The notes under the pieces are model-generated. The model searched no databases. It worked only from the letters and a program-made list of their open reading frames with translations, and was not told the origin of the DNA. From IMG/VR virus record IMGVR_UViG_3300028569_002417, positions 161,528-225,527 of that record: DNA of 64,000 nucleotides; one strand, written 5' to 3'. The position numbers and the translations under genes are program-made. How positions within the stretch are numbered: the first letter of the stretch is position 1; every line of letters starts with the position of its first letter. This document shows positions 29,973 to 59,066 of this stretch, one piece after another.

Positions 29973-30240
29973 AAAAAATCAACTAGGTTATTACGAACCT
30001 TGTATTCACTTGTCTGCTTTTGTCTTAGGTGTAAGTTTAATTATTTCACCTAATGGTCTTTTTTATTCTTGCGCTAATCTTGTCGCTTGTTTCTTTGTCT
30101 TATCTTTCTATTGGTGTCTTTGCCTCATTCATTGGGGCCAAGACAGAGATTGGCGAAATACATTTTATATAAGCTTGGTTTGGCTTGCCAATTTAATCTT
30201 ACAAGGCTATCACGCTTATATGTTGTCTAAACCTTATTGA
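29965..30240 (+). CDS. Small membrane protein
   Basis: Three hydrophobic segments. Confidence 0.55.
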   Translation: MSEKNQLGYYEPCIHLSAFVLGVSLIISPNGLFYSCANLVACFFVLSFYWCLCLIHWGQDRDWRNTFYISLVWLANLILQGYHAYMLSKPY

Positions 30241-30259
30241 TTATTACCAGTTGATCATG

Positions 30260-30291
30260 AATGCCTAGAAATTATTTTCTAGGCATTTTTT
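30260..30291 (+). terminator. Intrinsic terminator upstream of cas12i
   Basis: aatgcctagaaa / tttctaggcatt plus T run. Confidence 0.75.
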
Positions 30292-30292: not shown

Positions 30293-30321
30293 TTTACAAA
30301 AAAATAAAAGTGTTGTACACT
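30293..30321 (+). promoter_or_regulatory. Sigma70-like promoter of cas12i
   Basis: TTTACA (30293-30298), 17 nt, TACACT (30316-30321); same boxes at 52716-52744. Confidence 0.65.
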
Positions 30322-30362
30322 GCTCAGTAGAAATCCGCCACAAGGGCTACAGGAGCAGTGTC

Positions 30363-33300
30363 ATGGTCAGCGATAGCACTATTCGTCCTTATGCCAGCAA
30401 ATTGGCACCAAATGATCCTAAGCTGAAAATGCTTAACGATACATTCAATTGGCTAGACCATGCATACAAGGTATTCTTTGATGTATCAGTAGCACTTTTT
30501 GGTGCTATTGAACATGAAACTGCTCAAGAATTGATAGGTGAAAAAAGTAAATTCGACGCAGATCTAATCTGTGCTATCATGTGGTTTCGCCTAGAAGAAA
30601 AATCCGATAACCCCGGACCTCTCCAAACAGTAGAACAAAGAATGAGACTGTTCCAGAAATACTCTGGACACGAACCATCTTCTTTCACACAAGAATACAT
30701 CAAAGGAAACATAGATTCAGAAAAATATGAATGGGTAGATTGTCGTCTCAAATTTATAGACTTAGCTAGAAATATTAACACAACCCAAGAATCACTCAAA
30801 ATTGATGCATACACTCTTTTCATGAATAAATTAATTCCTGTAAGCAAAGATGATGAATTCAACGCTTATGGCTTGATTTCACAACTTTTTGGAACAGGAA
30901 AGAAAGAAGACAGATCAATCAAAGCAGCAATGCTTGAAGAAATCTCAAATATTCTCGCAGACAAAAAGCCAGATACTTGGGAAGAATATCATGATTTAAT
31001 TAAAAAAAATTTCAATGTTGATAATTACAAAGAACTTAAAGAAAAATTAAGCGCAGGAAGCAGTGGCCGTGATAGTTCTCTAGTAATTGACCTCAAAGAA
31101 GAAAAAACAGGACTACTTCAACCTAACTTTATCAAAAATCGTATTGTTAAATTCAGAGAAGATGCTGATAAAAAGAAAACTGTATTTTTATTGCCCAATA
31201 GAATGAAATTGAGAGAATTTATTGCTTCACAAATTGGACCATTTGAACAAAATAGCTGGTCAGCTGTTCTAAACAGGTCTATGGCTGCAATTCAATCTAA
31301 AAATAGCAGCAACATTCTATACACTAATGAAAAAGAAGAACGTAATAATGAAATTCAGGAATTGTTAAAAAAAGACATCTTGTCAGCAGCAAGTATATTA
31401 GGCGATTTTCGTCGTGGAGAATTTAACAGATCAGTGGTTTCAAAAAACCACTTGGGAGCAAGACTCAATGAGCTTTTTGAAATATGGCAAGACTTAACAA
31501 TGGATGATGGCATTAGAAAATATGTTGATCTTTGTAAAGATAAGTTTTCCAGAAGACCTGTAAAGGCATTGCTTCAATACATTTATCCATATTTCGATAA
31601 AATTACTGCAAAGCAATTCCTTGATGCAGCTAGTTACAACACACTTGTTGAAACCAATAATCGTAAGAAGATTCATCCAACTGTCACAGGACCAACAGTT
31701 TGTAATTGGGGGCCTAAGTCTACAATTAATGGATCAATAACACCACCAAATCAAATGGTCAAAGGAAGACCAGCAGGATCTCATGGAATGATCTGGGTCA
31801 CAATGACAGTCATAGATAATGGACGTTGGATCAAGCATCACCTTCCATTCTATAACTCACGCTATTATGAAGAACACTATTGCTACAGAGAAGGTCTGCC
31901 TACAAAAAATCAACCTCGTACTAAACAACTTGGAACTCAAGTAGGATCAACAATTTCTGCCACAAGTCTTGCTGCTCTTAAATCTCAAGAAGAGCAAGAC
32001 AGAAGGAATGATCGTAAAAATCGATTCAAAGCCCATAAATCTATCATCAGATCACAAGAGAACATTGAATATAATGTTGCTTTTGATAAGTCAACTAATT
32101 TTGATGTAACACGAAAAAATGGTGAGTTTTTCATCACTATCTCTTCTAGAGTTGCTACTCCAAAATATAGTTATAAATTAAATATTGGCGATATGATCAT
32201 GGGACTGGATAATAACCAAACAGCCCCATGCACATATTCAATTTGGCGTGTAGTGGAAAAAGATACAGAAGGTAGCTTCTTTCATAATAAAATTTGGCTT
32301 CAATTGGTAACTGACGGGAAAATAACAAGCATTGTTGACAATAACCGTCAAGTCGATCAGCTTTCTTATGCTGGCATCGAATACTCCAATTTTGCAGAAT
32401 GGAGAAAAGATCGTCGCCAATTCCTTCGATCAATTAACGAAGATTACGTTAAAAAATCAGATAATTGGCGTAATATGAATCTTTATCAATGGAATGCTGA
32501 ATATTCTCGTTTGCTTCTTGATGTCATGAAAGAAAATAAGGGCAAAAATATTCAAAATACATTCCGTGCAGAAATAGAAGAATTAATTTGTGGTAAGTTC
32601 GGTATAAGATTGGGAAGTCTTTTTCATCATTCACTCCAATTTCTTACTAATTGTAAGAGTCTTATATCATCTTACTTTATGCTTAACAATAAAAAAGAAG
32701 AGTATGATCAAGAGTTGTTTGACAGTGATTTCTTTAGGTTGATGAAAAGTATTGGGGACAAACGTGTTAGGAAACGCAAAGAGAAATCCTCAAGGATTTC
32801 ATCTACAGTATTGCAAATTGCAAGGGAAAATAATATCAAGTCTTTGTGTGTTGAAGGTGATTTACCTACAGCCACAAAGAAGACTAAGCCAAAACAAAAT
32901 CAAAAATCAATAGATTGGTGCGCCCGTGCTGTTGTCAAAAAATTGAATGATGGCTGTAAGGTATTGGGAATTAATTTACAGGCCATTGATCCAAGAGACA
33001 CAAGTCACTTAGATCCATTTGTTTATTATGGAAAGAAATCTACTAAAGTTGGAAAAGAAGCTCGATATACAATTGTTGAGCCATCCAATATAAAGGAATA
33101 CATGACAAATAGATTCGATGACTGGCATCGAGGGGTTACCAAAAAGTCAAAAAAGGGTGATGTTCAAACAAGCACTACTGTTCTTCTTTATCAAGAAGCT
33201 TTAAGGCAATTTGCTAGTCATTACGAACTTGATTTTGACTCTTTGCCAAAAATGAAATTCTATGATTTGGCTAAAAGATTGGGAGATCATGAAAAAGTGA

Positions 33301-33503
33301 TTATCCCTTGTCGTGGAGGAAGAGCTTATCTGTCTACTTATCCAGTGACAAAAGATTCCTCGAAAATAACTTTCAATGGTAGAGAAAGATGGTATAATGA
33401 ATCAGATGTGGTAGCTGCTGTTAACATCGTGCTGAGAGGCATAAGAGATGAAGACGAGCAGCCTGATGATGCCAAAAAACAGGCACTCGCTCGCACAAAG
33501 TAA
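30363..33503 (+). CDS. cas12i: Type V-I CRISPR effector Cas12i (1046 aa)
   Basis: AGGAG RBS then MVSDSTIRPY; LFQKYSGHEPS, FGTGKK, RuvC I IMGLDNN, RuvC II LCVEGDL, DWCARAV, TSHLDPFV, RGGRAYL, RuvC III SDVVAAVNI; adjacent array with AGAAATCCGTC..TTGACGG handle. Confidence 0.93.
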   Translation: MVSDSTIRPYASKLAPNDPKLKMLNDTFNWLDHAYKVFFDVSVALFGAIEHETAQELIGEKSKFDADLICAIMWFRLEEKSDNPGPLQTVEQRMRLFQKYSGHEPSSFTQEYIKGNIDSEKYEWVDCRLKFIDLARNINTTQESLKIDAYTLFMNKLIPVSKDDEFNAYGLISQLFGTGKKEDRSIKAAMLEEISNILADKKPDTWEEYHDLIKKNFNVDNYKELKEKLSAGSSGRDSSLVIDLKEEKTGLLQPNFIKNRIVKFREDADKKKTVFLLPNRMKLREFIASQIGPFEQNSWSAVLNRSMAAIQSKNSSNILYTNEKEERNNEIQELLKKDILSAASILGDFRRGEFNRSVVSKNHLGARLNELFEIWQDLTMDDGIRKYVDLCKDKFSRRPVKALLQYIYPYFDKITAKQFLDAASYNTLVETNNRKKIHPTVTGPTVCNWGPKSTINGSITPPNQMVKGRPAGSHGMIWVTMTVIDNGRWIKHHLPFYNSRYYEEHYCYREGLPTKNQPRTKQLGTQVGSTISATSLAALKSQEEQDRRNDRKNRFKAHKSIIRSQENIEYNVAFDKSTNFDVTRKNGEFFITISSRVATPKYSYKLNIGDMIMGLDNNQTAPCTYSIWRVVEKDTEGSFFHNKIWLQLVTDGKITSIVDNNRQVDQLSYAGIEYSNFAEWRKDRRQFLRSINEDYVKKSDNWRNMNLYQWNAEYSRLLLDVMKENKGKNIQNTFRAEIEELICGKFGIRLGSLFHHSLQFLTNCKSLISSYFMLNNKKEEYDQELFDSDFFRLMKSIGDKRVRKRKEKSSRISSTVLQIARENNIKSLCVEGDLPTATKKTKPKQNQKSIDWCARAVVKKLNDGCKVLGINLQAIDPRDTSHLDPFVYYGKKSTKVGKEARYTIVEPSNIKEYMTNRFDDWHRGVTKKSKKGDVQTSTTVLLYQEALRQFASHYELDFDSLPKMKFYDLAKRLGDHEKVIIPCRGGRAYLSTYPVTKDSSKITFNGRERWYNESDVVAAVNIVLRGIRDEDEQPDDAKKQALARTK

Positions 33504-33630: not shown

Positions 33631-34554
33631 CCCACAATACCTGAGAAATCCGTCCTTCGTTGACGGTGCAATCCATCATGCATAATATAATTTTCATCGC
33701 TTCCCACAATACCTGAGAAATCCGTCCTTCGTTGACGGACCTATTGCTCGCCTGCCAGTGCCTTTCCCAGCGAGTTCCCACAATACCTGAGAAATCCGTC
33801 CTACGTTGACGGCGATGAAAATATACTATGTTATGCAGAAGATTTTATCCCACAATACCTGAGAAATCCGTCCTACGTTGACGGCTATGAGTAATTTTGA
33901 AGCTACAGATAGTTTTCCATACCCACCCACAATACCTGAGAAATCCGTCCTACGTTGACGGTCAAGTAATTCGATGCGTGTTTTATTTGTTTGAACCACC
34001 CACAATACCTGAGAAATCCGTCCTACGTTGACGGCTCCATCGAGACTTGTCGGCCCCACAATACCTGAGAAATCCGTCCTACGTTGACGGCTTGGGCAGT
34101 CCCGAAGGGTCTAACTGCAAAACGCTACCCACAATACCTAAGAAATCCGTCCTACGTTGACGGGGACTAGAGGCGCAGCAGGCTGAAGTTGAAGCTTATG
34201 CCCACAATACCTGAGAAATCCGTCCTCCGTTGACGGCCTGAGCCATGCCGCCAGTTGCTTGGCTTTAGAATTCCCACAATACCTGAGAAATCCGTCCTAC
34301 GTTGACGGGGTTGGAAGAAAAGAAGGGACGATCTTTTTGTTTTGTCCCACAATACCTGAGAAATCCGTCCTACGTTGACGGTGCGATTCAAAAGAGAATG
34401 TTGGGCTTGGCCAGTGGGCCCCACAATACCTGAGAAATCCGTCCTACGTTGATGGGCCGTGTTCTCGATGACGACCCACAATACCTGAGAAATCCGTCCT
34501 GCGTTGACGGAATGAGGTGACCTTCGTAAAGGTAGGCCCACAACACCCAAGAAA
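33631..34554 (+). CRISPR. CRISPR array: 13 full 36-nt repeats, 1 truncated terminal repeat, 13 spacers
   Basis: Consensus CCCACAATACCTGAGAAATCCGTCCTACGTTGACGG starting at 33631, 33703, 33777, 33849, 33926, 33999, 34055, 34128, 34201, 34273, 34346, 34420, 34475; degenerate at 34537. Spacer lengths 36,38,36,41,37,20,37,37,36,37,38,19,26. Confidence 0.98.
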
Positions 34555-37912: not shown

Positions 37913-37922
37913 ATAAAAAAAA

Positions 37923-37948: not shown

Positions 37949-37972
37949 CAATTGAGTTATGATTATTTATTT

Positions 37973-39324: not shown

Positions 39325-39370
39325 CTTGCCATGAAGACCTCTTGTTCATAAAATAGAACAAGGGGTCTTT

Positions 39371-43039: not shown

Positions 43040-43040
43040 A

Positions 43041-43172
43041 ATGCTTGATTTTGAAGAAATAGTTCAGATTGAAGAGGTTGGTGAAGATGATTGTTATGAT
43101 ATTATGTTGTTAGAAAAAGACTTGTATTTGGACGAGCCAAATTTTATAGCTAACGATATTGTTGTTCACAAT
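43041..43172 (+). mobile_element. Split intein C-half (44 aa)
   Basis: EIVQIEEVGEDDCYDI...NFIANDIVVHN followed by Cys+1. Confidence 0.9.
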
Positions 43173-45560
43173 TGTGGCATGGACAAGCGTTATGTTGAGC
43201 GTAAGAAGGGTCATGAAAAATATGAAATTCATCATTTAATCAAGCCTATTCTTGAAAAAACATATGGAGTTATGATTTATCAAGAGCAAATCATGCAGAT
43301 ATTGAATGTTGTTGGTGAAATTCCTTTGAAGGATTGTGAAGCTGTAAGAAAAGCTATATCAAAGAAGAAAATAGAATCTATTGAAAAATATAAAGATATG
43401 TTTATTAAGAATGGGCAGAAAAATTTAAGTTTTACAAAAGAACAAATGGAAGAGTTTTTTAATCAAATATTGTCTTGGAGTGAATATGGCTTTAATAAAA
43501 CTTTGACCGAAGACACAATTATAAATTGTGTTGATGGCGCAAAGCAAATAAAAGACATTTGTGCCGGAGACATAGTTTATTCTATAAATGAAAAGGGAGA
43601 ACAGGTACAAACTGAAGTTGCGGCAGTTCATGATCATGGCGTGGTCAATGTTGTGGAGGCGACATTTGATGACGGCTATGTTGTGAGGTGTACTTATGAT
43701 CACAAATTTTTGACTGAAGAAGGACAAGTTCCTCTTTGGTTAATTGTTAAAGACAACATGGTTGTGCTGAGTTCTCCGTTGGGAGAACATGCAGGGGAAG
43801 AAAAAGAATGGTCATCTGGCAAGGTGTGGACAAATAATAAAAACTCTGGAAAAGATGAAAGAGCATCGAGAGAATTGCAAGGAGTGCAACTATCTGAAGT
43901 GGAGGCTGGAGGGAAAGAAATACATTTCCAGATGCGGAGTGGAATTTCTGCGTTCACCTCAACTGGTCCAAAATCATCAGAAAACTGGAGAAATGAATTC
44001 GGAGTGGTTCACTTCACTCCAGAGTATGCTTCTATCACCAATACCCGGAATTTGGTGTCTAGGAGAATATTACGAGTTGTGACCGTGGGTAAAAGACAAT
44101 GTTACGATCTTGAAGTCGCCATCTCAACTCACAACTTTATTCTTCCGAATGGAATAATCACATCGAACTCACATGCTGTGGCTTATACTTACATCAGCAT
44201 GTATCTTTTGTATTTGAAGGTTCATTACCCTCATGAATTTTATGCTAGCATGTTATCATGTGAGACTTTGGCTGAGAAGATAAAAGACATTAAGATGGAG
44301 GCTAAGATACATGGTGTTGAGATGCATCGTCTTGACATTAACAAATCTGGCATTAATTTTGAGCTTAAGGATAATTTAATTTATTTTGGTTTTAGTAATG
44401 TGAAGGGTATAGGAGAGGGTCCTGCTCAAAAGATAGTGGCTGGTCAGCCGTATCGTAGTTTTGAGGATTTCCTTTATCGATGTGGAACAGATGCTTCGAT
44501 GTTGAAGCCGATACTTGGTTTAAGATGTTTTAGGGATCGTGATCCAATTACTTTGTGGAAATTTGCAGAGCATTTCAAAGAATGTTTTAAGAAAAACGAA
44601 GAGAAGCGCAAGCGTTTTGGTACTTCTTTGGAGAGGTACGAAGACGAGTTAAGGGAGCTTATTCCTGAAGTTGAATTCAAATTATCTGATTTGAGTGGTG
44701 ATTCACCATTTGATAACATTGAGTATCAGCAAAAATATGATAAGGAAGAGGAGATTACTGTTCTCAAGGAGTATGAGTGTAAGGAAGGGGATGGTGTTGG
44801 AAGGATTGAGATGGTATATGTTCCTGTTGATGGGACTGATGTTGTGATTGAGCGTGAGGTGATGAGATATTACAAGAAGATTGCTACTAAGAGGCCTTGG
44901 AACAGGTGGAAGGATCTTAAGAATCTTTGGAATAAAAGAAAGAGAACTATAGCGAGATTTTCTGATGCTGATTTCAAGACATTGCCAAGATTGATTGATT
45001 TCGATCCAGACCAATATGATATACCTAAGGATTTGGCTAAGGAGTTTAAGAATCCGGTTGTTTCAGAAGAAAAGTTTTATGGATTTGCTTGGATTCATGA
45101 GCTTGAGAGAAGTCCTGATTATAGAGGGAATTTGACATTTGATTCTTTGAGAAGTGACATTGACAGTTCTTCTGGTCCTGTTGAGTTGAGGGTTAAGAAA
45201 GTAATTCAGATGACTAGTAAAAAGGGTTCTACTTATTCTCAGGTATTGGCGGAAGATGTTACTGGTCAAGAGAATAAGATTAATGTTTGGTCTGATGACT
45301 GGGATCGTTGGCATAAAGAATTAAGTGAAGGTAACTTAATTAGGATAAGATTGCAACCTCCTTCTGGTGGTTTCAATACATTCTTGTTGGAATCAAATCA
45401 GAATGGCAAGTATAGAGGTCAGAAGAGATATCGAGACAAGGATGATGATCCTCGTGTTATTGTCATGAGAGTTGGCTTAAAAGAAGAAGAGAAATTCATG
45501 ACAGATGAAGAGGTTTTGGAACTTTTTAATAATTTAGGTATGGAAAATAAAAATGACTGA
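43041..45560 (+). CDS. dnaE: DnaE C-terminal part, starting with C-intein and containing a cis intein
   Basis: ILEKTYGVMIYQEQIMQ, YGFNK..SHAVAY, YLKVHYP, DINKS, VKGIG, OB-fold end. Confidence 0.92.
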   Translation: MLDFEEIVQIEEVGEDDCYDIMLLEKDLYLDEPNFIANDIVVHNCGMDKRYVERKKGHEKYEIHHLIKPILEKTYGVMIYQEQIMQILNVVGEIPLKDCEAVRKAISKKKIESIEKYKDMFIKNGQKNLSFTKEQMEEFFNQILSWSEYGFNKTLTEDTIINCVDGAKQIKDICAGDIVYSINEKGEQVQTEVAAVHDHGVVNVVEATFDDGYVVRCTYDHKFLTEEGQVPLWLIVKDNMVVLSSPLGEHAGEEKEWSSGKVWTNNKNSGKDERASRELQGVQLSEVEAGGKEIHFQMRSGISAFTSTGPKSSENWRNEFGVVHFTPEYASITNTRNLVSRRILRVVTVGKRQCYDLEVAISTHNFILPNGIITSNSHAVAYTYISMYLLYLKVHYPHEFYASMLSCETLAEKIKDIKMEAKIHGVEMHRLDINKSGINFELKDNLIYFGFSNVKGIGEGPAQKIVAGQPYRSFEDFLYRCGTDASMLKPILGLRCFRDRDPITLWKFAEHFKECFKKNEEKRKRFGTSLERYEDELRELIPEVEFKLSDLSGDSPFDNIEYQQKYDKEEEITVLKEYECKEGDGVGRIEMVYVPVDGTDVVIEREVMRYYKKIATKRPWNRWKDLKNLWNKRKRTIARFSDADFKTLPRLIDFDPDQYDIPKDLAKEFKNPVVSEEKFYGFAWIHELERSPDYRGNLTFDSLRSDIDSSSGPVELRVKKVIQMTSKKGSTYSQVLAEDVTGQENKINVWSDDWDRWHKELSEGNLIRIRLQPPSGGFNTFLLESNQNGKYRGQKRYRDKDDDPRVIVMRVGLKEEEKFMTDEEVLELFNNLGMENKND
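43500..44168 (+). mobile_element. Cis intein (223 aa) at YGFNK|SH, begins with Thr
   Basis: TLTEDT, CTYDHKFLT, CYDLEV..HNFILPNGIITSN|S. Confidence 0.88.
43789..44082 (+). CDS. Overprinted alternative-frame ORF inside the intein (Cys/His-rich)
   Basis: GGGAG RBS + ATG; spans the intein linker and ends just inside the C-terminal splicing region. Confidence 0.45.
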   Translation: MQGKKKNGHLARCGQIIKTLEKMKEHRENCKECNYLKWRLEGKKYISRCGVEFLRSPQLVQNHQKTGEMNSEWFTSLQSMLLSPIPGIWCLGEYYEL

Positions 45561-50835: not shown

Positions 50836-51123
50836 ATGGCTTGTAAAGTTGAATTGCGTGATCTTCCTATGAATCCAAGTTGGTATGAAAAGGAGATTGC
50901 ATTCAAAAAAATGTTTACTGCTTTCAAAAAGCAGGTTGCGGAAGCTGGTATTCTGCATGATTTTAAGAAGAGAGAGTACTATGAGACTCCCGGTCAAATT
51001 CGTCGCCGTAAGAGTCGTGAGGCGGAAAATGTGCGTTTGAAGGAAAAGCTGCGTGAGAATTTCCCAGAAAGACGTAAGCCGAAGAAGTCTGATAACAAGA
51101 AAACAAAAGCCAAGGGTGAATAA
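50836..51123 (+). CDS. rpsU: Ribosomal protein bS21-like
   Basis: FKKQVAEAGILHDFKKREYYETPGQIRRRK. Confidence 0.85.
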   Translation: MACKVELRDLPMNPSWYEKEIAFKKMFTAFKKQVAEAGILHDFKKREYYETPGQIRRRKSREAENVRLKEKLRENFPERRKPKKSDNKKTKAKGE

Positions 51124-51386
51124 TGCCATCTAAAAAAGGTACGATCATGAGCCTGAATGTTGATCCCAGCATTCAGGAAAAGATGAAGGCAGTTGCCAAG
51201 AGGCGAAACATTAGTGTTTCCAAGCTTGTTCGTGATTTGGTTGACAATAATCTTCCAGATGCTGACGAGGAAGTAGATGTTGTGATCTTTAAGATTCCAA
51301 CTGCCATGAGGACAACTCCTGATTCTCTTAAGCAATGGCTGCAAAATCGTATTGATGCTGTAGTAAGGGCTTTGACAACATCATGA
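51123..51386 (+). CDS. Ribbon-helix-helix DNA-binding protein
   Basis: MSLNVDPSIQEKMKAVAKRRNISVSKLVRDLV. Confidence 0.7.
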   Translation: MPSKKGTIMSLNVDPSIQEKMKAVAKRRNISVSKLVRDLVDNNLPDADEEVDVVIFKIPTAMRTTPDSLKQWLQNRIDAVVRALTTS

Positions 51387-51877
51387 AATTCAAAGAACCT
51401 CTGAAAATTGTTCCAGTTGCTGATATCCCTAAGGCAAAAGATGTTCCTCTTGAAAGCCTTATGGATATATTCCGTCTTTGCACAAAGATGGAAAAAATTT
51501 GCGATGAAAATGATGGAATAGGTTTATCAGCAGTTCAAGTTGGAGTTCCATGGAATCTTTTCATTGTTAAGCGCAATCGTCATTTTGAATATTATGTCAA
51601 TTGCGAGTATACAGGCCATGGAGACAAGATAAAGTCAGTTGAGGGCTGCTTGTCTCTTAGGAATGAGGATGGCACTTTTAGAAGGTTTGAGGTTGAGAGA
51701 TTTTCTAAGACACGAATAAAAGGCAAGCAACTTGTTGTTTCAGGGATGCCTTCTCTTGTTTTGAATGATGTTGATCGTGAAGAGATTAATCTTTTCAGTA
51801 TTGTTTTTCAGCATGAATGCGATCACAGTCGAGATGTACTCGTTTCGCAAATAGGTCGTGAGGTGGAATTGGCCTAA
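51383..51877 (+). CDS. def: Peptide deformylase
   Basis: GIGLSAVQVG, EGCLS, QHECDH. Confidence 0.92.
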   Translation: MKFKEPLKIVPVADIPKAKDVPLESLMDIFRLCTKMEKICDENDGIGLSAVQVGVPWNLFIVKRNRHFEYYVNCEYTGHGDKIKSVEGCLSLRNEDGTFRRFEVERFSKTRIKGKQLVVSGMPSLVLNDVDREEINLFSIVFQHECDHSRDVLVSQIGREVELA

Positions 51878-51903
51878 GAAATCCGTCTTCCGTTAAAGGA
51901 CGG
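51873..51903 (+). repeat. Solitary degenerate Cas12i repeat
   Basis: CCTAAGAAATCCGTC-TTCCGTTAAAG-GACGG; first 15 nt identical to part of array repeat 8; CCGTC/GACGG stem intact. Confidence 0.7.
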
Positions 51904-51920
51904 AGCTAAGGGAATGAATT

Positions 51921-52199
51921 ATGTTAAGTCTCAAACAATTAGAAGATGTGTGTCTGAATTCAGATGCGACTTCTCAAAAATGTCGATATATTTGTCAAGA
52001 TGAAGTTGACAAAAATAAGTTTTACTGCTTAAAACTTTCTGCTAAAGCTAGCAAAATAGATAATGAAATTGAAAATTATATCAAAGTAATTAGCTTAAAA
52101 GGCAGAGATCCTTCTGATGAAAATTTACCATTAGGGGACAATTGTTCTGGTTATCCTTTTCTTAGGCATATCGAACAAGGTTACGACAAGAAAAATTAG
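51921..52199 (+). CDS. Hypothetical Cys-containing protein
   Basis: AAGGGA RBS; 92 aa. Confidence 0.6.
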   Translation: MLSLKQLEDVCLNSDATSQKCRYICQDEVDKNKFYCLKLSAKASKIDNEIENYIKVISLKGRDPSDENLPLGDNCSGYPFLRHIEQGYDKKN

Positions 52200-52696
52200 A
52201 GACTTTCTAGTCTCTCTCTGATTATCTGGTAGATATCCTTTCCTTTGTTTTCTTCAACAGCAGAGGAAAGGATATTTGCTTCTAGCTCATTACTGTTAAA
52301 TCTTGCTATCTCTCTTACCATTAGTTCGTTCGTCTTTTCGCTGCTTATAGCTCTGTTTCGATAGTAGAACAATAGCATTGCTATGACAACTAATGCGAAG
52401 ATGAAGATTAGTGCTCCATCGCCTTGGATTATTTGAACTCCTGTGTTTTCGTTTCGTGAAATTGCGCCGTTTATGTTGACTAGGCCGCTTTGTATTTCTT
52501 TCAGAAGACTATTTTGGGCTGATAGATCTTGCCTAGTCTTCATGAGTTCGGCCATTACCCCATTTTGGTTTGTGCGTATATCCTCTATTTTACCATTTTG
52601 ATTTTGTATTTTGGGGTTGTTTCTTGGGTTGAAGTTTGCACATCCTACCAAGTTTAACAAGGTTGCGGCTGCAATAATCAACAAAAATTTGTACAT
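52196..52696 (-). CDS. Putative lipoprotein with second TM helix
   Basis: GGAGG RBS; MYKFLLII..LVGC lipobox. Confidence 0.6.
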   Translation of the reverse strand: MYKFLLIIAAATLLNLVGCANFNPRNNPKIQNQNGKIEDIRTNQNGVMAELMKTRQDLSAQNSLLKEIQSGLVNINGAISRNENTGVQIIQGDGALIFIFALVVIAMLLFYYRNRAISSEKTNELMVREIARFNSNELEANILSSAVEENKGKDIYQIIRERLESL

Positions 52697-52715
52697 ACAT
52701 CCTCCACAATATGTA

Positions 52716-52744
52716 TTTACAAGTGGGGAATTTCTTTGTACACT
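52716..52744 (+). promoter_or_regulatory. Sigma70-like promoter, same boxes as cas12i promoter
   Basis: TTTACA (52716-52721), 17 nt, TACACT (52739-52744). Confidence 0.65.
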
Positions 52745-52747
52745 ATG

Positions 52748-52773
52748 CTGAGAAATCCGTTTCATGTTGACGG
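52748..52773 (+). repeat. Solitary Cas12i repeat handle (crRNA-like leader)
   Basis: CTGAGAAATCCGTTTCATGTTGACGG vs array CTGAGAAATCCGTCCTACGTTGACGG: 22/26 identical, same length, stem kept by a U-G pair. Confidence 0.85.
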
Positions 52774-52799
52774 ATGATCAACCCGCTGGAGGATTTGGC

Positions 52800-53210
52800 G
52801 TGGCTCAAGGCAAGGATGTTTTTTTCTTTGGTGATGAATTTGATGATGAAAATTCATCAAGTGAAAGCGCACAGATTGCAAATGAATTTAAGCAGAATGC
52901 TAATTCATTAGTTGTACATCATTTGTCAAATTACTTCAAGGACAAGATGTTGCACACAGGAGGAAATGTTCCTGATCAATTACTAAATAGTCATAAAAGA
53001 ATATCTATGGTTTTGAACTACACTGTTTCTAATGGTGTAGATCATGCTCATGAAAGACTAGAATTTTCTGAGGGGAGAAACAATGATGATGAGAATTCAG
53101 AGCTTATCGTCACTGTTCTTCATGGAATAGCCAAAAGTGGTGTTCCGAAGGAATTTGCTGGTGGTATGCTTTGTCTGCACTTGGAATTAATAGAAGGGAT
53201 AGATTTTTGA
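52800..53210 (+). CDS. Hypothetical acidic protein
   Basis: GGAGGA 52788-52793 then GTG (MAQGKDVFFFG). Confidence 0.6.
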   Translation: MAQGKDVFFFGDEFDDENSSSESAQIANEFKQNANSLVVHHLSNYFKDKMLHTGGNVPDQLLNSHKRISMVLNYTVSNGVDHAHERLEFSEGRNNDDENSELIVTVLHGIAKSGVPKEFAGGMLCLHLELIEGIDF

Positions 53211-53521
53211 ATCTTGATTTATTATTGTTGTCAAGGCAATTTGAGACTGTCGAATTGCCGAAGGAAAAGAAATACCTCCTGAGATATTTTGAAAATCCAG
53301 TTCAGGAGGCTTTTCTTAAATATTTCTTTGTATTTGGTAATTATGTTAATTTTTGTGACCACACTGGTCATTTCGTGCAGAAAAAATGGTTAAAACATCT
53401 GCATGAAAAATTAAAAACAATTGAAAAAGCCCACAAAGATGCCAGATCTAACTTTGACATGGCTGGACTTGTTGAAATTGAAAAAGGTGAATTCAAATTC
53501 AGTCGTCATCTTCCTAAATAG
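53207..53521 (+). CDS. Hypothetical protein
   Basis: TTG overlapping upstream stop. Confidence 0.55.
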   Translation: MNLDLLLLSRQFETVELPKEKKYLLRYFENPVQEAFLKYFFVFGNYVNFCDHTGHFVQKKWLKHLHEKLKTIEKAHKDARSNFDMAGLVEIEKGEFKFSRHLPK

Positions 53522-53524
53522 TGT

Positions 53525-53767
53525 ATGGCACTAATATCATTCGGCGATTGGCGTAAAAAATTTGATGAAGCAAGCCCTACTACAAGATTAAGGGCTGGAA
53601 TTGAGGCGGGTAATTATCCCATGTCTGCTGGGGTGGCTATGTCTCGATCCACACCAAGCCCATCTTTTGTAAAGAAGGCAATTGAAGAATTAGGATCACC
53701 TGAACATCCTAAAAGGAAAAATAAGACTAAAAAGAAACGTAGGAATTCCAAGAAAAGGGAAAAATGA
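53525..53767 (+). CDS. Small basic protein, capsid-targeting-like N-terminus
   Basis: TAAATA 4 nt before ATG; MALISFGDWRKKFDE. Confidence 0.6.
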   Translation: MALISFGDWRKKFDEASPTTRLRAGIEAGNYPMSAGVAMSRSTPSPSFVKKAIEELGSPEHPKRKNKTKKKRRNSKKREK

Positions 53768-54162
53768 TTTTTTTCAATGAATGGATGCAGGAAAGATTCG
53801 ATGAGGCTAAAAAGTCTCGTCGCACCCCTGTTCCTCATTCTGATATTGAAAAATGGATGCGTTCTTTAGAGCTTCTCAAGAAAGATCTTGAGGAATTGCA
53901 GAAAGCCAAGAAGAATGCTGCCCAAAGATTTGCTAGAGAAGCAAAAATCAAGAAGGAAAAAGAAAAGAAGGCTAAAGATGCCAAGAAGTTAAAAAAGAAA
54001 AAAGATTCAGAAATAGATAAAAAATCTGAAAAAGAACCTGAAGTTGAGAAGAAAGATAAAAAACCTGAAGTCAAAAAATATGATTCCAAGAAAAATGTTG
54101 TATCTGATAAGTTCAGACAGATTAAGAGTCAAAGGCGTAAAAATAATAAGCCTAGAGACTAA
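53764..54162 (+). CDS. Lys-rich protein, capsid-targeting-like N-terminus
   Basis: MIFFNEWMQERFDE. Confidence 0.6.
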   Translation: MIFFNEWMQERFDEAKKSRRTPVPHSDIEKWMRSLELLKKDLEELQKAKKNAAQRFAREAKIKKEKEKKAKDAKKLKKKKDSEIDKKSEKEPEVEKKDKKPEVKKYDSKKNVVSDKFRQIKSQRRKNNKPRD

Positions 54163-54212
54163 TTATTTTTAAGTTGGCAGTCTCCACTATAATTAAATAG
54201 CGGAGATAGATC

Positions 54213-54659
54213 ATGAGTACTGAAAATATTTGCAACGATGATTCCTTAGATCAATCTAAGGCAAAAAATGCCAGAGATGTTCTGAAAGGCATTATTGTTT
54301 CAGAATCAAATCTTGAAACATATTTAATTGCAGTAGCTGTTCATAAAGATTCATCCAAGAATTTTATCAATAGAATAAGTTGTAAGAAGGGCATACCTCT
54401 TGATGGATATGTTTATGATGCTCAATCAGACAGTTATTTCATAGAATGCACTGATTTTTTGCATGTAGGGGTAATTCCTGTTTCTTTTGTTGCTACTGCT
54501 AAAGATTCTTATTTTTGGAAAATGAATATACCTTTGCCTGAAGCTGTCATTAAAAAGTATTTGACTGAGATCCAAAAGAAGGATTTGAAAAACTTTAAGA
54601 GTCATTTTAGCTCTCAAGATTACATGATTAATTATGTTCAAATGGTTAATCCAAACTGA
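54213..54659 (+). CDS. Hypothetical protein
   Basis: GGAG RBS. Confidence 0.6.
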   Translation: MSTENICNDDSLDQSKAKNARDVLKGIIVSESNLETYLIAVAVHKDSSKNFINRISCKKGIPLDGYVYDAQSDSYFIECTDFLHVGVIPVSFVATAKDSYFWKMNIPLPEAVIKKYLTEIQKKDLKNFKSHFSSQDYMINYVQMVNPN

Positions 54660-54697
54660 ATTCATGTTTTTCTGGTTCTTCTGCCATAAATAATTTC

Positions 54698-55525
54698 ATG
54701 GCATGCTCATCTACTGGAATAGGCTGTACTACTACAACTGCAAAAAGTTGTCCTGACGAATATGGATGCGTTAGCGGCGTATGTGCCGATTTCATCATTC
54801 GTAGGCATGATACTAAACCATCTTTCAAGGTTAAGATCGAAGATTGCGATGGACCTCTTGATCTTACAGATCTTGTTCTTGAGGCCACAATGTGGGCCAA
54901 GGGGAAGCTTAAGGTTTCTCTTGATCAGAATGATTCAGTTATTGGTTTGGCTGATAATATTGGCTTTAATCAAGTAATGCAGGGCGATGTGATTATCATG
55001 GATCAGGCTAGATTGCCTGAGAAGATGCTTGTTGTTGGATTTGATGAAGTAAATCGCCTCATTCGTGTCCAGAGAGGTTATCATGGAACCCCAGTGCAAA
55101 ACTGGAGACGTGGCACAGGATTGAAAATCATTAAGTTTTCTAACGCAACTGCTACAACTGAAATGTTGTATCAGGACATCATTAACATTGATGGAACAAC
55201 GACTAAGGATGTTTTAGTCGATAGTTTTTTAATTTATGATTGGCAGAGTGAAGACACATGTCTTCCGGGTTGTTATTATTTGGAATTTAAGCTTTTGAAA
55301 ATGGTGGTTTCTTTTGCTCTTGCTTATGATTCTTCTGTCCCAAGCAATCAAATTCCTAGTAATCTTTTGCCTGATGGAGTTATTCCGAGTTTTACTGATC
55401 CAAGTTTTATACCTTCCGATTTTGGTTGTTCTATGAATCCACTTGTTGAATGGATAAGAAGGTTTCCTATTGATAAAGAAGGCTTTATAATTAAAATAAC
55501 GAATACTTTTACGGCTGATGATTGA
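54698..55525 (+). CDS. Probable virion structural protein (BppU-N-like)
   Basis: FIIRRHDTKP..PLDLT..YDWQSEDT..GCYYLEFK; TAAATA before ATG. Confidence 0.5.
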   Translation: MACSSTGIGCTTTTAKSCPDEYGCVSGVCADFIIRRHDTKPSFKVKIEDCDGPLDLTDLVLEATMWAKGKLKVSLDQNDSVIGLADNIGFNQVMQGDVIIMDQARLPEKMLVVGFDEVNRLIRVQRGYHGTPVQNWRRGTGLKIIKFSNATATTEMLYQDIINIDGTTTKDVLVDSFLIYDWQSEDTCLPGCYYLEFKLLKMVVSFALAYDSSVPSNQIPSNLLPDGVIPSFTDPSFIPSDFGCSMNPLVEWIRRFPIDKEGFIIKITNTFTADD

Positions 55526-55591
55526 CATCATAGAATTTAAGTCGTATTTTTGTATAGGGTCTTTTTTATGTTGGAGCATGGATTTCACAAG

Positions 55592-56137
55592 ATGCAGCAA
55601 AACAAATTTCCTAGAGAGCGAAGCGAAGATCAAAACAGAGTTAACTGGCAGATAAGAGTGCCACAAGTTAGGGTTGTTCGTGAAGAAGAGCAACTTGGCA
55701 TTATGGCTACTGATGAGGCAAGAAAACTTGCCATGGACAATGGTCTTGATCTAGTAGAGATCGCTCCTACTGCGAAGCCTCCTGTTTGTAGGATTATGGA
55801 TTATGGTCGTTATAAATACGAACTGAAAATCAAGAAAAAAGAAGCTGCAAAGAAGCAGCGTGAGTCACAAGTCCAGATAAAGGAAATTAGACTTCGTCCT
55901 GCTATTCAAGATCATGATATTGAAACAAAAATTAATCAGGCGAAGAATTTTCTTGAAGAAGGTTGTAAGGTTCAATTTTACCTTCAATTCAAGGGTTACC
56001 GTGAATTGAATCATAAAGAGCAGGGTTTCGCTGTTATGAAAAAAATTGTTGAAACAATGGAGCAATTTGGAGTCGTAGAGAAAAGACCTGCGATGGAAGG
56101 CAATCGAATTACATGCTTTTTTACTCCCAAAGTATAG
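55592..56137 (+). CDS. infC: Translation initiation factor IF-3 (start could be 55568)
   Basis: VNWQIRVPQVRVV, LDLVEIAPTAKPPVCRIMDYGRYKYE, KEIRLRPAIQDHD. Confidence 0.95.
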   Translation: MQQNKFPRERSEDQNRVNWQIRVPQVRVVREEEQLGIMATDEARKLAMDNGLDLVEIAPTAKPPVCRIMDYGRYKYELKIKKKEAAKKQRESQVQIKEIRLRPAIQDHDIETKINQAKNFLEEGCKVQFYLQFKGYRELNHKEQGFAVMKKIVETMEQFGVVEKRPAMEGNRITCFFTPKV

Positions 56138-56148
56138 TGGGAAACATC

Positions 56149-57357
56149 ATGATTGATAATGTTTTGGCCAAAAAGGTCAACGATGTTCAGAATGAATTCA
56201 ATCGTCGATTATATCATCATGTTCAACTAAGAGATAATTCATCAGGTCCTCCTCTTTTTTTTAGAATGATTCATGATTCCAATCAGGATCTTCTTGAATT
56301 TGCATTTGGTCATTTTGGTAAGAATCTTGGTGATTTGACTCATGTCCTAGACATGACTCATCCAGACCTTGTAACCATATTTGATGGTAGTTTTTCAGAC
56401 GAGCATATTTTTTCAAAGCAATGTATAGAATTTTTGGCGATGGCACAATATGCTAAAAACAATGGAATGAGTCATATTTTCCCGTTATTGGGAAATCTTT
56501 TGATCAAAGAATCATTAGATAAAACTATTGTCAAAAAGATTGATGGTGCAAATTACAATAAATCTTATGTTCGTCTTATTCTCGATTCAGAAGAGAGAGA
56601 TGCAATAAGATTTTGCAAGAAAATGCAAGTTATTGATCTTCAGGCCTTTTATAAAAAAGGCGAAGAATCATGGAATGCACAGCCAGATTCTTTTAAGCAA
56701 TTTATCAGATATGATTCTGCATATATGCGTGAATTAAAGCAAGCTGAAAAGAAAATGAAGAGATATGAGGATTTGGGTTGTCAAAGTCTTGCTTCTGAAA
56801 TTTCTAAGAGTATTGAAGTTTTCCGTGAAAACATGGAACAGGCATATTATGGATTCAATCGCATTACAATGACTAATGCTGCTATTATTTTAGCAAAATC
56901 AATGTCTTACAACTATAGTCCTTCCTGCCAGATTTCTGCTGGTGGGCATATAATGAAAATTGAAGCTCAGGTTACAATAAATCGTTCATTCTTCAAAGAT
57001 ATTTATTTTGATTCTTCCCTTGTAGTTGACGCAACTTATCATTATGAGCCAAAAGTATATCCTTTCCATGAACTTAAAGATGTGGCTTCGGATGAAGTTC
57101 TCCAAACGATAAAAATGCTTGAAAACTTCCCAGAAGCAAACAATAAACCAATATTCGATCATTTTGGCGTTATTGTGCCTTCAATAGCTTATAGGAATAA
57201 AATGTTTAAGAATGAGAAAGGTATATTGCAGGATTATGCCGTTTTAGAAGATTGTCAAAAAGAAATGGACAAAATGTTCATCAGGAATAAATGTTTTTAT
57301 CCGATAATTGTTGGCGAGAAAGATGGAAAATGCTTTTTTATATGTTATTGGACTTGA
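56149..57357 (+). CDS. Hypothetical protein
   Basis: About 400-aa ORF; C-terminal PIIVGE..FFICYW. Confidence 0.65.
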   Translation: MIDNVLAKKVNDVQNEFNRRLYHHVQLRDNSSGPPLFFRMIHDSNQDLLEFAFGHFGKNLGDLTHVLDMTHPDLVTIFDGSFSDEHIFSKQCIEFLAMAQYAKNNGMSHIFPLLGNLLIKESLDKTIVKKIDGANYNKSYVRLILDSEERDAIRFCKKMQVIDLQAFYKKGEESWNAQPDSFKQFIRYDSAYMRELKQAEKKMKRYEDLGCQSLASEISKSIEVFRENMEQAYYGFNRITMTNAAIILAKSMSYNYSPSCQISAGGHIMKIEAQVTINRSFFKDIYFDSSLVVDATYHYEPKVYPFHELKDVASDEVLQTIKMLENFPEANNKPIFDHFGVIVPSIAYRNKMFKNEKGILQDYAVLEDCQKEMDKMFIRNKCFYPIIVGEKDGKCFFICYWT

Positions 57358-57366
57358 GGTTGCGTA

Positions 57367-57618
57367 ATGATTTATAATTTAACGAAGGAAGAACTTCTGG
57401 AATTTGCACATGTGATTTACGAGCAATCTGTGAATGGTTATTTAGATCTGAAAGAAAGTACTTGTCACAAGTTGCTAGTAAATTTTTTAGCAAACAAAAA
57501 AACTTCTATTCCAGATACTAATGTAAACATGAGTACTAATTTTGTGGATACAAATCAGATTTTTAATTCTGATGTTTTCACGGTAACAGAAAGTTTCATC
57601 ATCAGTCAAACTCAATGA
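57367..57618 (+). CDS. Hypothetical protein
   Basis: GAGGT RBS. Confidence 0.55.
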   Translation: MIYNLTKEELLEFAHVIYEQSVNGYLDLKESTCHKLLVNFLANKKTSIPDTNVNMSTNFVDTNQIFNSDVFTVTESFIISQTQ

Positions 57619-57642
57619 GTTTGTAAATTTACGGGGATAATT

Positions 57643-58014
57643 ATGTCGAAGAGTAAGATTCTCACTCCTATGGGTTCAGTTTATGATTCTACTATTATTG
57701 GTGGTGGATCAAAAGTTCCTAAAATCAAATCTGTCAAGCCAACTGGTTCGCAGGTTCTAATTGAATTCTTGACATCTCAGGAAATGCTTGGGACAAGTCT
57801 AGCTGTCAATGAAAAAACAGATTTGAAAGTTCCTTTGCAAGGCTATGTTCGCTCTGTAGGCCCTAACTTCAAATCATCAGATTATGGGTTTAATATAGGC
57901 GACAGAGTCACTGTTTCAGGTCCCGGTATTCATGTTCCTAATTGGGACAATATTCACCGTGATCGCTTCCTTATGGAACCTTCTTCAATTAAAGGCGTGA
58001 TCATAGAAGAATGA
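57643..58014 (+). CDS. GroES/gp31-like co-chaperonin
   Basis: VKPTGSQVLIE, GYVRSVGP, IGDRV, IKGVI. Confidence 0.7.
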   Translation: MSKSKILTPMGSVYDSTIIGGGSKVPKIKSVKPTGSQVLIEFLTSQEMLGTSLAVNEKTDLKVPLQGYVRSVGPNFKSSDYGFNIGDRVTVSGPGIHVPNWDNIHRDRFLMEPSSIKGVIIEE

Positions 58015-59066
58015 AAGACTACTATGTCGTTCTAGGTATTCCTAGAAATGCATCTAAAGAAGATATTGTTAGGGCATACCGCAAGGGTGCCCAAACACAT
58101 CATCCTGACCGTAATCCCGGCGACTCAGAAGCCGAAAAGAGATTTCGTGAAATTCAGGAAGCGTATGAGATATTAAACGATCCAGAAAAACGTGCTGAAT
58201 ATGACAGTGGAGGCCACTCCATGCATTTCAGGATGCGTGGATTTGAGGGTAATCCTTTCAGTGGTTCATTTGGTGATATTTTCCAGAATAGTTCTTATCG
58301 TGGAAGAAATCTAACAGTAAGATTAGAAATTGATTTATCAGAAGCTTATAACGGTTGTAACAAAGAAATAATTATAAAAGTTAAAAATACATGCACGACA
58401 TGTAAGGGTCAAGGCCAGATAAGTAATGAATCATGTGCTAATTGTAATGGTCAAGGATTCACTAAAGTAAATAATGCTCCTTTTGAATTCAGAACAAATT
58501 GTCCAATTTGTAATGGTTTGGGAAAGATAAATCCAATCACATGCGTTGATTGCAGTGGTTCTGGAATGCTTTCTGGATATAAGGAAAAAAAGATACAGGT
58601 TCAAATTCCATGTGGAGTTGACAGTGGAATTAATCTGAGAATGCCCGGTCAAGGAGAGGAATCAATCAGGGGAGGAAATCCCGGTGATTTAATTATTCAT
58701 GTCTTGGTTAAAGAACATGAATATTTTCAAAGAGAAGGAATAGATCTTCTTGTTGATGTCCCTCTTTCCTTTTCCCAGTTGACATTTGGCTGTGAAGTCG
58801 AAATACCTACAATTTGCGACGAGACGCTTACTTGTAAAATTCCATTGGGAACACAAAGCCACGCCAAGTTTAAGCTTGGAGGCAAAGGAATGAAACTTCC
58901 AAATGGTGTTTATGGTGATATGATTGTTACTGTAAAAGTTGAGATACCAAAAGGAATAACAGGTGAATATAAAGAAGCAATTTTGAAACTACAGGATTTT
59001 GAAAAAAATAACTTTGGATCTAGAAGACAAAGATGGCAAAAAATTGTAGGCAAAAAAGATAAATAA
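58011..59066 (+). CDS. dnaJ: DnaJ chaperone
   Basis: DYYVVLG..HPDRN J-domain, four CxxCxGxG, C-terminal domain. Confidence 0.95.
   Translation: MKDYYVVLGIPRNASKEDIVRAYRKGAQTHHPDRNPGDSEAEKRFREIQEAYEILNDPEKRAEYDSGGHSMHFRMRGFEGNPFSGSFGDIFQNSSYRGRNLTVRLEIDLSEAYNGCNKEIIIKVKNTCTTCKGQGQISNESCANCNGQGFTKVNNAPFEFRTNCPICNGLGKINPITCVDCSGSGMLSGYKEKKIQVQIPCGVDSGINLRMPGQGEESIRGGNPGDLIIHVLVKEHEYFQREGIDLLVDVPLSFSQLTFGCEVEIPTICDETLTCKIPLGTQSHAKFKLGGKGMKLPNGVYGDMIVTVKVEIPKGITGEYKEAILKLQDFEKNNFGSRRQRWQKIVGKKDK

What the first reader, a model, noticed from the sequence alone, without database searches (positions are those of the whole stretch)
52716..52802. Promoter-driven orphan crRNA-like unit fused to an mRNA leader
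The predicted +1 (about 52751) coincides with the expected 5' end of a mature crRNA handle, AGAAAUCCGUUUCAUGUUGACGG (23 nt, 5-bp stem, 7-nt loop), so no processing would be needed. The guide region that follows contains the GGAGGA RBS (positions 15-20) and GTG of ORF 52800. Possible roles: Cas12i-repressed gene (addiction or toxin-like), regulatory guide, or decoy RNA.
Basis: partly seen in the sequence, partly recalled or inferred. Interest (0 to 1): 0.9.

Follow-up and report, generated by a model that had tools for sequence, protein, structure and literature searches.

The report
Solitary Cas12i repeat heading a phage mRNA
A single copy of this huge phage's own Cas12i CRISPR repeat sits exactly at the predicted start of a gene's mRNA, one of several such copies in this phage and its relatives, which suggests that Cas12i binds selected phage mRNAs (perhaps its own too) rather than only guiding DNA cutting.

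Summary
Window 52751-52773 (AGAAATCCGTTTCATGTTGACGG) is a solitary copy of the 23-nt crRNA handle of the Cas12i array in the same window (cas12i 30363-33503, array 33631-34510). It follows a TTTACA-17-TACACT promoter by 6 nt, and the GGAGGA RBS and GTG 52800 lie inside the would-be guide.

It is not an orphan:
- A second unit lies at 51877-51903.
- At least two more lie elsewhere in the same phage.
- Further units sit in front of other genes (IF3, a glycosyltransferase) in related huge phages.
- Stems stay paired while loops drift.

The cas12i gene has a paralogous promoter followed by AGAAATCCG. A relative has a RuvC-dead, array-less Cas12i with an intact handle in its own 5' UTR.

Best reading (about 0.4): a Cas12i-binding mRNA leader that couples translation or stability of the downstream gene to Cas12i. 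Rivals:
- a Racr-like decoy;
- a CreR-like guide, based on a 9-nt seed plus TTC PAM near the cas12i promoter;
- a neutral relic.

Nothing supports a toxin or addiction role: ORF 52800 is a conserved core gene that relatives keep without the unit.

I class it as a new variant of a known kind (solitary repeat units, crRNA-like RNAs).

The parts
52716..52744 (+). Sigma-70-like promoter TTTACA-17-TACACT of the unit and of ORF 52800
   Evidence: Position conserved in relatives. The TTGTACACT box is shared only with the cas12i promoter.
52751..52773 (+). Solitary repeat unit SRU2 (the finding): Cas12i crRNA handle, 6-nt tail AGAAAU, stem CCGUU/GACGG, 7-nt loop
52774..52802 (+). Would-be guide, which is also the mRNA leader: RBS GGAGGA 52788-52793, start GTG 52800
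52800..53210 (+). ORF 52800 (136 aa): conserved all-alpha protein of unknown function, found in this clade of huge phages with or without the unit
51877..51903 (+). SRU1: second solitary unit (AGAAATCCGTCTTCCGTTAAAGGACGG, 7-bp stem) between the deformylase stop and ORF 51921. It is a 32-nt insertion relative to three relatives and is flanked by TAAG
51921..52199 (+). ORF 51921 (92 aa). Its RBS lies at guide nt 5-10 and its ATG at guide nt 18-20 of SRU1
30293..30337 (+). cas12i promoter TTTACA-17-TACACT followed 7 nt later by AGAAATCCG (30329-30337), a degenerate handle at the start of the cas12i leader. Paralogous to the SRU2 module
30363..33503 (+). cas12i, with the true start at ATG 30363. 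RuvC D/E/D and the pre-crRNA processing K and HH residues are conserved
33631..34510 (+). CRISPR array: 13 repeats of CCCACAATACCTGAGAAATCCGTCCTACGTTGACGG
30235..30261 (-). Possible DNA target of the SRU2 guide: TTC PAM plus a 9-nt PAM-proximal match (ATGATCAAC), 32 nt upstream of the cas12i -35 box, at the foot of the terminator 30259-30288
   Evidence: The chance of a 9-nt seed somewhere in the window is about 0.06 per guide.

Best explanation
SRU2 is a solitary copy of the phage's own Cas12i repeat handle, built into the 5' end of the ORF 52800 mRNA.

Proposed mechanism:
- The RNA starts at, or 1-3 nt before, A(-23) of the handle, so Cas12i can load it like a crRNA with little or no processing.
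- The segment Cas12i then holds as 'guide' is the ribosome-binding site and start codon.
- Occupancy by Cas12i therefore controls translation, most likely by repression, and possibly protects the 5' end of the mRNA.
- SRU1 does the same for ORF 51921 after Cas12i cuts the operon transcript.
- The degenerate handle at the start of the cas12i mRNA gives feedback on Cas12i itself.

The own DNA locus is not attacked, because the handle occupies the place of the TTN PAM.

What is shown: homology to the repeat, a preserved stem, promoter and RBS geometry, recurrence in relatives, co-residence with the cognate array or Cas12i, and a nuclease-dead, array-less Cas12i that carries a handle in its own leader.

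What is inferred: transcription from this start, binding by Cas12i, and the direction of the effect on expression.
For: - The handle is real. It has 19/23 identity, 0 of 300 shuffles match, and all 75 stem cells pair across 15 distinct units while the loops vary.
- The nucleotides needed for Cas12i2 processing, A(-23), G(-22) and A(-21), are kept, as are the processing residues of the window's Cas12i.
- The start codon of an ORF of 60 aa or more lies within guide nt 4-32 in 7 of 10 solitary units, in front of unrelated genes: ORF 51921, ORF 52800, IF3, a GT2 glycosyltransferase, and 119-aa, 82-aa and 418-aa ORFs. The 418-aa case is counted from a TTG start at guide nt 32; the RBS-backed ATG lies at guide nt 59.
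- Units appear and disappear at orthologous sites. SRU1 is a clean 32-nt insertion, and the IF3 unit is present only in L138.
- The cas12i promoter and leader are paralogous to the SRU2 module.
- L165 has a syntenic Cas12i with RuvC D>N and E>T, no array, and an intact handle-like hairpin in its own 5' UTR, with the RBS at guide nt 10-14 and the ATG at 21-23. L166 has a degenerate repeat in front of its cas12i.
- The second lineage that carries such units also carries the window-type array.
- No cellular genome among 185,579 species representatives has an array with this handle.
Against: - There are no expression or binding data.
- The promoter is a 9/12 consensus match in a region with no excess of such matches.
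- Closeness to a start codon is partly expected for anything inserted into short phage intergenic regions.
- Some units are not followed by a gene: L152 is followed by a hairpin, L162a by no ORF, and L162c by a distant ORF.
- The handle at the window's own cas12i leader lacks the stem, and 89% relatives lack even the tail.
- Whether the L138, L150 and L152 phages encode Cas12i is unknown.
- Translational control by a Cas12 bound to a repeat in an mRNA has no natural precedent that I could find.
Confidence: 0.4

Rival explanations
1. RNA anti-CRISPR (Racr-like decoy). The units are transcribed to soak up Cas12i delivered by rival Cas12i-carrying huge phages. They load it with non-targeting 'guides'. 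Their position in mRNA leaders merely borrows existing promoters.
For: - Viral solitary repeat units just downstream of promoters are known, and many act as Racrs. RacrIC1 shares a bicistronic RNA with an Acr gene (PMC10651486).
- Several copies per genome would raise the dose.
- Some units are not followed by a gene (L152, L162a).
- A Cas12i that is 89% identical and uses the same handle sits in a different genomic context (L126, L127), so a plausible rival exists.
Against: - The window's phage, and the L133/L135-type relative, carry the cognate array or Cas12i themselves. A decoy would blunt their own system.
- No cellular genome has this repeat.
- No spacer of three arrays matches any related locus in hand.
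- SRU1 has no promoter of its own.
- It does not explain the handle in the 5' UTR of a dead, array-less cas12i.
Confidence: 0.27
2. CreR-like regulatory guide. The SRU2 RNA guides Cas12i to a partly matching DNA site next to the cas12i promoter. Cas12i binds without cutting and represses cas12i or the upstream operon.
For: - The best PAM-flanked match of the SRU2 guide in the whole window is TTC plus a 9-nt seed at 30258-30250, 32 nt upstream of the cas12i -35 box.
- Nine PAM-proximal pairs is the criterion used for viral crRNA-like regulators.
- V-A CreR targets lie within or next to the cas12a promoter.
- A 13-nt match does not activate Cas12i2.
Against: - A 9-nt seed somewhere in the window is expected about 0.06 times per guide, and five guides were tested.
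- The site lies beyond a terminator and does not overlap the -35 or -10 box.
- The unit is 22 kb from cas12i and is a single repeat, not a mini-array.
- The guides of SRU1, the L162 units and L165 have no comparable target.
Confidence: 0.1
3. Neutral ectopic repeat copies. Fragments of the repeat are scattered by recombination or microhomology-mediated insertion and persist for a while without function.
For: - An excess and rapid turnover of ectopic repeat copies in genomes with active CRISPR systems has been reported (PMC10120712).
- SRU1 is flanked by a TAAG duplication.
- SRU2 has decayed in L120 and L138.
Against: - Only the mature 23-nt handle part is kept.
- Every stem change is pair-preserving, while the loops vary.
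- Units are co-oriented with the downstream genes.
- Three units lie 6-7 nt after a -10-like box (SRU2, cas12i leader, L162a).
Confidence: 0.12

Closest known systems
Viral solitary repeat units / RNA anti-CRISPRs (Racr; Faure 2019; Camara-Wilpert 2023, PMC10651486)
   Same: A single CRISPR repeat in a viral genome, just downstream of a promoter, with the repeat's hairpin kept. It may share a transcript with a protein gene, as RacrIC1 does with AcrIC5.
   Different: - The cognate effector and array are in the same phage genome, and no host system with this repeat was found.
- The subtype is V-I.
- The units abut ribosome-binding sites of ordinary conserved genes.
- One unit sits inside an operon.
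CreR / CreA / tracr-L crRNA-like regulators and repeat-like units upstream of cas12a (PMC10120712; 10.1101/2023.03.10.532045)
   Same: A degenerate repeat next to the effector gene (the cas12i leaders of the window, L165 and L166), suggesting autoregulation. The SRU2 guide has a 9-nt PAM-proximal match near the cas12i promoter.
   Different: - The known cases act on promoter DNA through a separate small RNA.
- Here the handle is part of the mRNA, the 'guide' is the gene's own translation start, and the own locus has no PAM.
- SRU1 and SRU2 lie about 18-19 kb downstream of the cas12i-array cassette (SRU2 is 22 kb from the cas12i promoter).
Viral crRNA-like anti-defence RNAs (Cracr; 10.1101/2024.10.29.618823)
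   Same: Phage-encoded crRNA-like RNAs that reprogram a Cas12 effector.
   Different: Cracrs target host cas or creT promoters. No host target is known here, and the effector is the phage's own.
Phage mRNA punctuation and translational operators (RNase III sites of T7; RegA, gp32 and coat-protein operators). Recalled from general knowledge, not tested here.
   Same: A protein-recognised hairpin just upstream of a ribosome-binding site that processes the mRNA or represses translation, including of the protein's own mRNA.
   Different: Here the RNA-binding protein would be a CRISPR effector and the operator a CRISPR repeat.

Membership tests
Type V-I (Cas12i) crRNA handle | 23-nt 3' part of the repeat: a 6-nt tail starting A(-23)G(-22)A(-21), then a stem-loop ending at G(-1) | tested here: met
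   AGAAAU tail, CCGUU/GACGG stem and 7-nt loop. 19/23 identical to the array handle.
Type V-I (Cas12i) crRNA handle | A cognate Cas12i with processing residues in the same genome | tested here: met
   Cas12i at 30363-33503, E 1e-101 to Cas12i2. K, HH and RuvC D/E/D are conserved.
Type V-I (Cas12i) crRNA handle | Bound and processed by Cas12i | not testable with these tools
   Needs RIP, EMSA or a processing assay.
Solitary repeat unit / Racr | A repeat match in a viral intergenic region with no second repeat nearby | tested here: met
   The nearest other unit is 874 nt away and the array is 18 kb away.
Solitary repeat unit / Racr | Not associated with cas genes, and mimics the host's CRISPR system | tested here: not met
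   The cognate cas12i and array are in the same phage. No array with this handle was found in 185,579 cellular genomes.
Solitary repeat unit / Racr | [quoted passage not shown] | not testable with these tools
   No terminator lies before ORF 52800, which predicts an mRNA leader. Inhibition was not assayed.
CreR / CreA crRNA-like regulator | A degenerate mini-array (repeat-spacer-repeat) inside or beside the cas locus | tested here: not met
   SRU2 is a single unit, about 18 kb downstream of the cas12i-array cassette and 22 kb from the cas12i promoter. The cas12i leader itself does carry a degenerate handle.
CreR / CreA crRNA-like regulator | A spacer partly complementary, PAM-proximal, to a cas or toxin promoter with a proper PAM | tested here: inconclusive
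   TTC plus a 9-nt seed, 32 nt upstream of the cas12i -35 box and not overlapping the promoter. Window-wide expectation is about 0.06 per guide.
CreTA (CRISPR-repressed toxin) | An adjacent toxin whose promoter is the target of the crRNA-like RNA | tested here: not met
   ORF 52800 and ORF 53207 are conserved syntenic genes in relatives without the unit. They have no toxin family or fold match, and the guide does not match their promoter.

The most novel reading that the evidence does not exclude
In a clade of huge phages, Cas12i has been co-opted as a sequence-specific RNA-binding regulator. crRNA handles placed at the 5' ends of mRNAs, including its own, would form a Cas12i-controlled set of genes. 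In one lineage, a nuclease-dead Cas12i without any array keeps only this role.
Probability: 0.3. Interest if true: 0.85.

Novelty: new variant of a known kind. Interest (0 to 1): 0.65.

Why it matters
If Cas12i really binds these leaders, this would be a natural case of a class 2 CRISPR effector controlling genes at the RNA level through its repeat handle. That differs from the DNA-level autorepression known for CreR and tracr-L, and from the pure decoy role of Racrs.

It would also:
- explain what an array-less, nuclease-dead Cas12i does in a phage;
- show how phages without Cas1-Cas2 still spread repeats through their genomes;
- offer a compact, natural protein-RNA switch (a 23-nt handle placed next to a ribosome-binding site) for use with Cas12i tools.

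If the decoy reading is right instead, these are the first candidate type V-I RNA anti-CRISPRs. They would point to Cas12i-mediated warfare between huge phages.

Tried and rejected
- Full-length DNA targets of the SRU1 and SRU2 guides or of the array spacers inside the window: only chance-level matches.
- Spacers of three arrays (window, L127, L170) against all fetched loci: no genuine protospacer and no shared spacers.
- The guide as a weapon against unit-less relatives: the orthologous sites in L120, L123 and L124 lack a TTN PAM and mismatch in the seed (read).
- Toxin or addiction role: no Pfam or PHROG family and no PDB fold match for ORF 52800; the genes are conserved and syntenic without the unit.
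- A loose pattern scan of IMG/VR gave mostly chance hits and wasted a scan. The tighter pattern worked.
- Rfam found no family for the unit, only a tmRNA.
- Cas12i is absent from the GenBank phage collection.
- More distant homologues of the CxxCxxCC gene sit in other contexts without Cas12i.
- The L165 guide has no target in 43 kb of its own contig.
- The ORF call 30261-33503 was rejected in favour of a start at 30363, because 30259-30288 is a terminator.

Full report
**Setting.** The window (36% GC) looks like part of a huge phage.
- It carries a tmRNA, a PolIII alpha, a peptide deformylase, S21, IF3 and DnaJ.
- It is identical to IMG/VR contigs of 168 and 225 kb.
- The ORF at 30261-33503 is a Cas12i (E 1e-101 to Cas12i2, PDB 6ltp).
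- It is followed by a 13-repeat array at 33631-34510, with repeat CCCACAATACCTGAGAAATCCGTCCTACGTTGACGG.
- The real start of cas12i is ATG 30363. All 55 homologues align from about residue 36, and 30259-30288 is an intrinsic terminator of the upstream gene.
- The RuvC D/E/D residues, and the K and HH residues that Cas12i2 uses for pre-crRNA processing, are conserved.

**The observation.** 52751-52773 (AGAAATCCGTTTCATGTTGACGG) matches the last 23 nt of the repeat at 19 positions.
- Those 23 nt are exactly the handle of mature Cas12i2 crRNA. Cas12i2 cuts before A(-23); A(-23) is essential, G(-22) and A(-21) are important, and the upstream sequence is irrelevant (PMC7567891).
- The differences are three loop positions and one stem change that keeps a U.G pair. 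The fold is the same as that of the array repeat.
- Outside the array only two sites reach 4 or fewer mismatches. None did so in 300 shuffles.
- The promoter TTTACA-17-TACACT puts position +1 at about 52751.
- GGAGGA (guide nt 15-20) and GTG 52800 (nt 27-29) follow, with no terminator in between.
- Homologues show that translation starts at the GTG.
- So the description is right.

**It is not an orphan.**
- A second unit, SRU1 (51877-51903), has the same tail and a stem lengthened to 7 bp.
  - It sits between the deformylase stop and ORF 51921, whose RBS is at guide nt 5-10 and whose ATG is at guide nt 18-20.
  - Three relatives lack it. It is a clean 32-nt insertion flanked by TAAG.
- An exact-pattern scan of IMG/VR and a relaxed scan of the related loci (0 hits in reversed-sequence controls over 593 kb) found further units.
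  - Two or three are elsewhere in the same phage (L162; one of them lies 6 nt after a TTGATT-17-TATGAT promoter).
  - In related huge phages, one lies right before the IF3 gene (L138).
  - Others lie before a GT2 glycosyltransferase, a 409-aa ParB-like gene and an 82-aa ORF (L159, L155, L151).
  - One lies before a 119-aa ORF (L150), and one after a PolIII fragment, followed by a hairpin (L152).
  - Four other hits lie in coding sequence of unrelated contigs and look like chance.
- Across 15 distinct array and solitary handles, all 75 stem cells pair, while the loops vary freely.
- In 7 of 10 solitary units, the start codon of an ORF of 60 aa or more lies within guide nt 4-32. For the ParB-like gene this counts a TTG start at nt 32; the RBS-backed ATG is at nt 59.
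- At orthologous sites the units come and go.
  - SRU2 is intact in the window and decayed in L120 and L138.
  - It is absent in L123, L124 and more distant relatives, although they keep the promoter and the GCTGGAGGATT-GGCGTG start region.
  - The IF3 unit exists only in L138.

**Link to cas12i.**
- TTGTACACT occurs exactly twice in the window: in the SRU2 promoter and in the cas12i promoter.
- Both promoters read TTTACA-N14-TTGTACACT-N6/7-AGAAATCCG.
- The cas12i leader therefore starts with the handle tail, although its stem has degenerated, and 89% relatives lack the tail.
- L165 is the same contig as the unit-free relative L123. It has a syntenic Cas12i (39% identity) with several notable features.
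  - RuvC-I is D>N and RuvC-II is E>T, while the processing residues are intact.
  - There is no array at all: a terminator is followed directly by the CxxCxxCC gene.
  - A well-formed handle-like hairpin (GAAAAUCCUGUAU-UUUUAU-AUACAGG) sits in its own 5' UTR, with the RBS at guide nt 10-14 and the ATG at 21-23.
  - This is the only such hairpin in 43 kb of that contig.
- A 27% relative with its own array (L166) has a degenerate repeat 25 nt before its cas12i RBS.
- The L133/L135-type phage carries three units. It also carries the window-type array, because L170 overlaps L171 at 99.5%.
- No array with this handle exists in the 185,579 representative cellular genomes; the one match is probably chance.

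**Targets.**
- Neither the guides nor the spacers have full-length targets in the sequences in hand.
- With a TTN PAM required, the best match of the SRU2 guide in the window is TTC plus 9 contiguous nt at 30258-30250 (minus strand).
- That site lies between the stop of a small membrane ORF and the terminator, 32 nt upstream of the cas12i -35 box.
- Nine PAM-proximal pairs is the published criterion for regulatory crRNA-like RNAs.
- Such a seed is expected about 0.06 times per guide in this window, and the site does not overlap the promoter. I keep this as a minor rival.

**Interpretation.** All readings share a first step: Cas12i binds the handle in the transcript. They differ in what follows.
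- I rank a cis-acting, Cas12i-responsive mRNA leader first (0.4). The reasons are:
  - the translation start region repeatedly falls inside the guide segment;
  - SRU1 sits in an operon without a promoter of its own;
  - the units co-reside with the cognate system in the two lineages where this could be checked;
  - cas12i genes themselves carry handles in their leaders, including a dead, array-less one.
- A Racr-like decoy (0.27) has strong precedent. It fits the units that are not followed by genes. A rival phage with the same handle exists (L127). But a decoy would also blunt the phage's own system.
- The CreR-like reading gets 0.1 and neutral relics 0.12.
- The toxin or addiction idea finds no support. 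ORF 52800 and its neighbours are conserved, syntenic core genes of the clade, with or without the unit. The product is an all-alpha protein (pLDDT 83) with no family or fold match.

**Comparison with known systems.**
- The element belongs to the known class of solitary repeat units and crRNA-like RNAs.
- It fails the Racr criterion of being unlinked to cas genes and mimicking a host system.
- It fails the CreR criterion of being a mini-array beside the cas genes.
- I found no description of type V-I units, of units that share a genome with their own effector, or of a handle inside an effector's own mRNA leader.
- Hence 'new variant of a known kind'. Its value depends on experiments that are simple to run.

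**Limits.**
- There are no expression data.
- Most relatives are partial contigs, so the absence of Cas12i cannot be shown.
- Promoter calls are consensus-based.
- My statement that the L152 handle equals the published Cas12i2 repeat rests on memory. The text search did not find the string.

Noticed in passing
L165:9956-13009 (IMG/VR 3300047481_002095): A syntenic Cas12i homologue with RuvC D>N and E>T, intact processing residues, no CRISPR array, and a handle-like hairpin in its own 5' UTR. It looks like a natural dead Cas12i.
   Followed up: partly
window 30259-30362: The mechanical ORF start 30261 is wrong. 30259-30288 is a 13-bp terminator, 30293-30321 is the cas12i promoter, and the true start is ATG 30363.
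   Followed up: yes
window 33614-33640: The array leader (GTATTGTGGG) can pair with the first 10 nt of the first repeat (CCCACAATAC). This recalls the leader-repeat hairpins described for Cas13 arrays.
   Followed up: no
window 34035-34054 and 34456-34474: Two spacers of only 20 and 19 nt in an array whose other spacers are 36-41 nt. No target was found for them.
   Followed up: partly
window 34537-34567: A degenerate terminal repeat (CCCACAACACCCAAGAAAGAAGAGG...) supplies the ribosome-binding site of the CxxCxxCC gene 34568-35002.
   Followed up: no
window 38973-39327: A phage-encoded tmRNA (Rfam RF00023, 100 bits). tmRNA-like sequences also sit next to the CxxCxxCC gene in distant relatives (L174, L177).
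   Followed up: no
window 35186-36457 and 43008-45560: PolIII alpha appears split into two genes about 6.5 kb apart, with the tmRNA and other genes between them. Relatives (L123, L165) have a single 908-aa gene.
   Followed up: no
window 50836-59066: A cluster of translation-related genes: S21, peptide deformylase, IF3 and DnaJ. It is interleaved with the repeat units.
   Followed up: partly
window 37917-38312 and 8328-8460: Long tandem arrays with 9/12-nt and 18-nt periods inside ORFs (repetitive proteins).
   Followed up: no
L126, L127: The Cas12i plus array cassette (89% identical protein, nearly the same repeat, 29 repeats) sits between genes unrelated to the window's flanks. The cassette has therefore moved between phage genomes or lies in a variable region.
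   Followed up: partly
L162:4605, 9606, 13859 (IMG/VR 3300028571_002266, 140.6-155.3 kb): Further handle copies in the same phage outside the window. One lies inside an ORF and is doubtful.
   Followed up: partly
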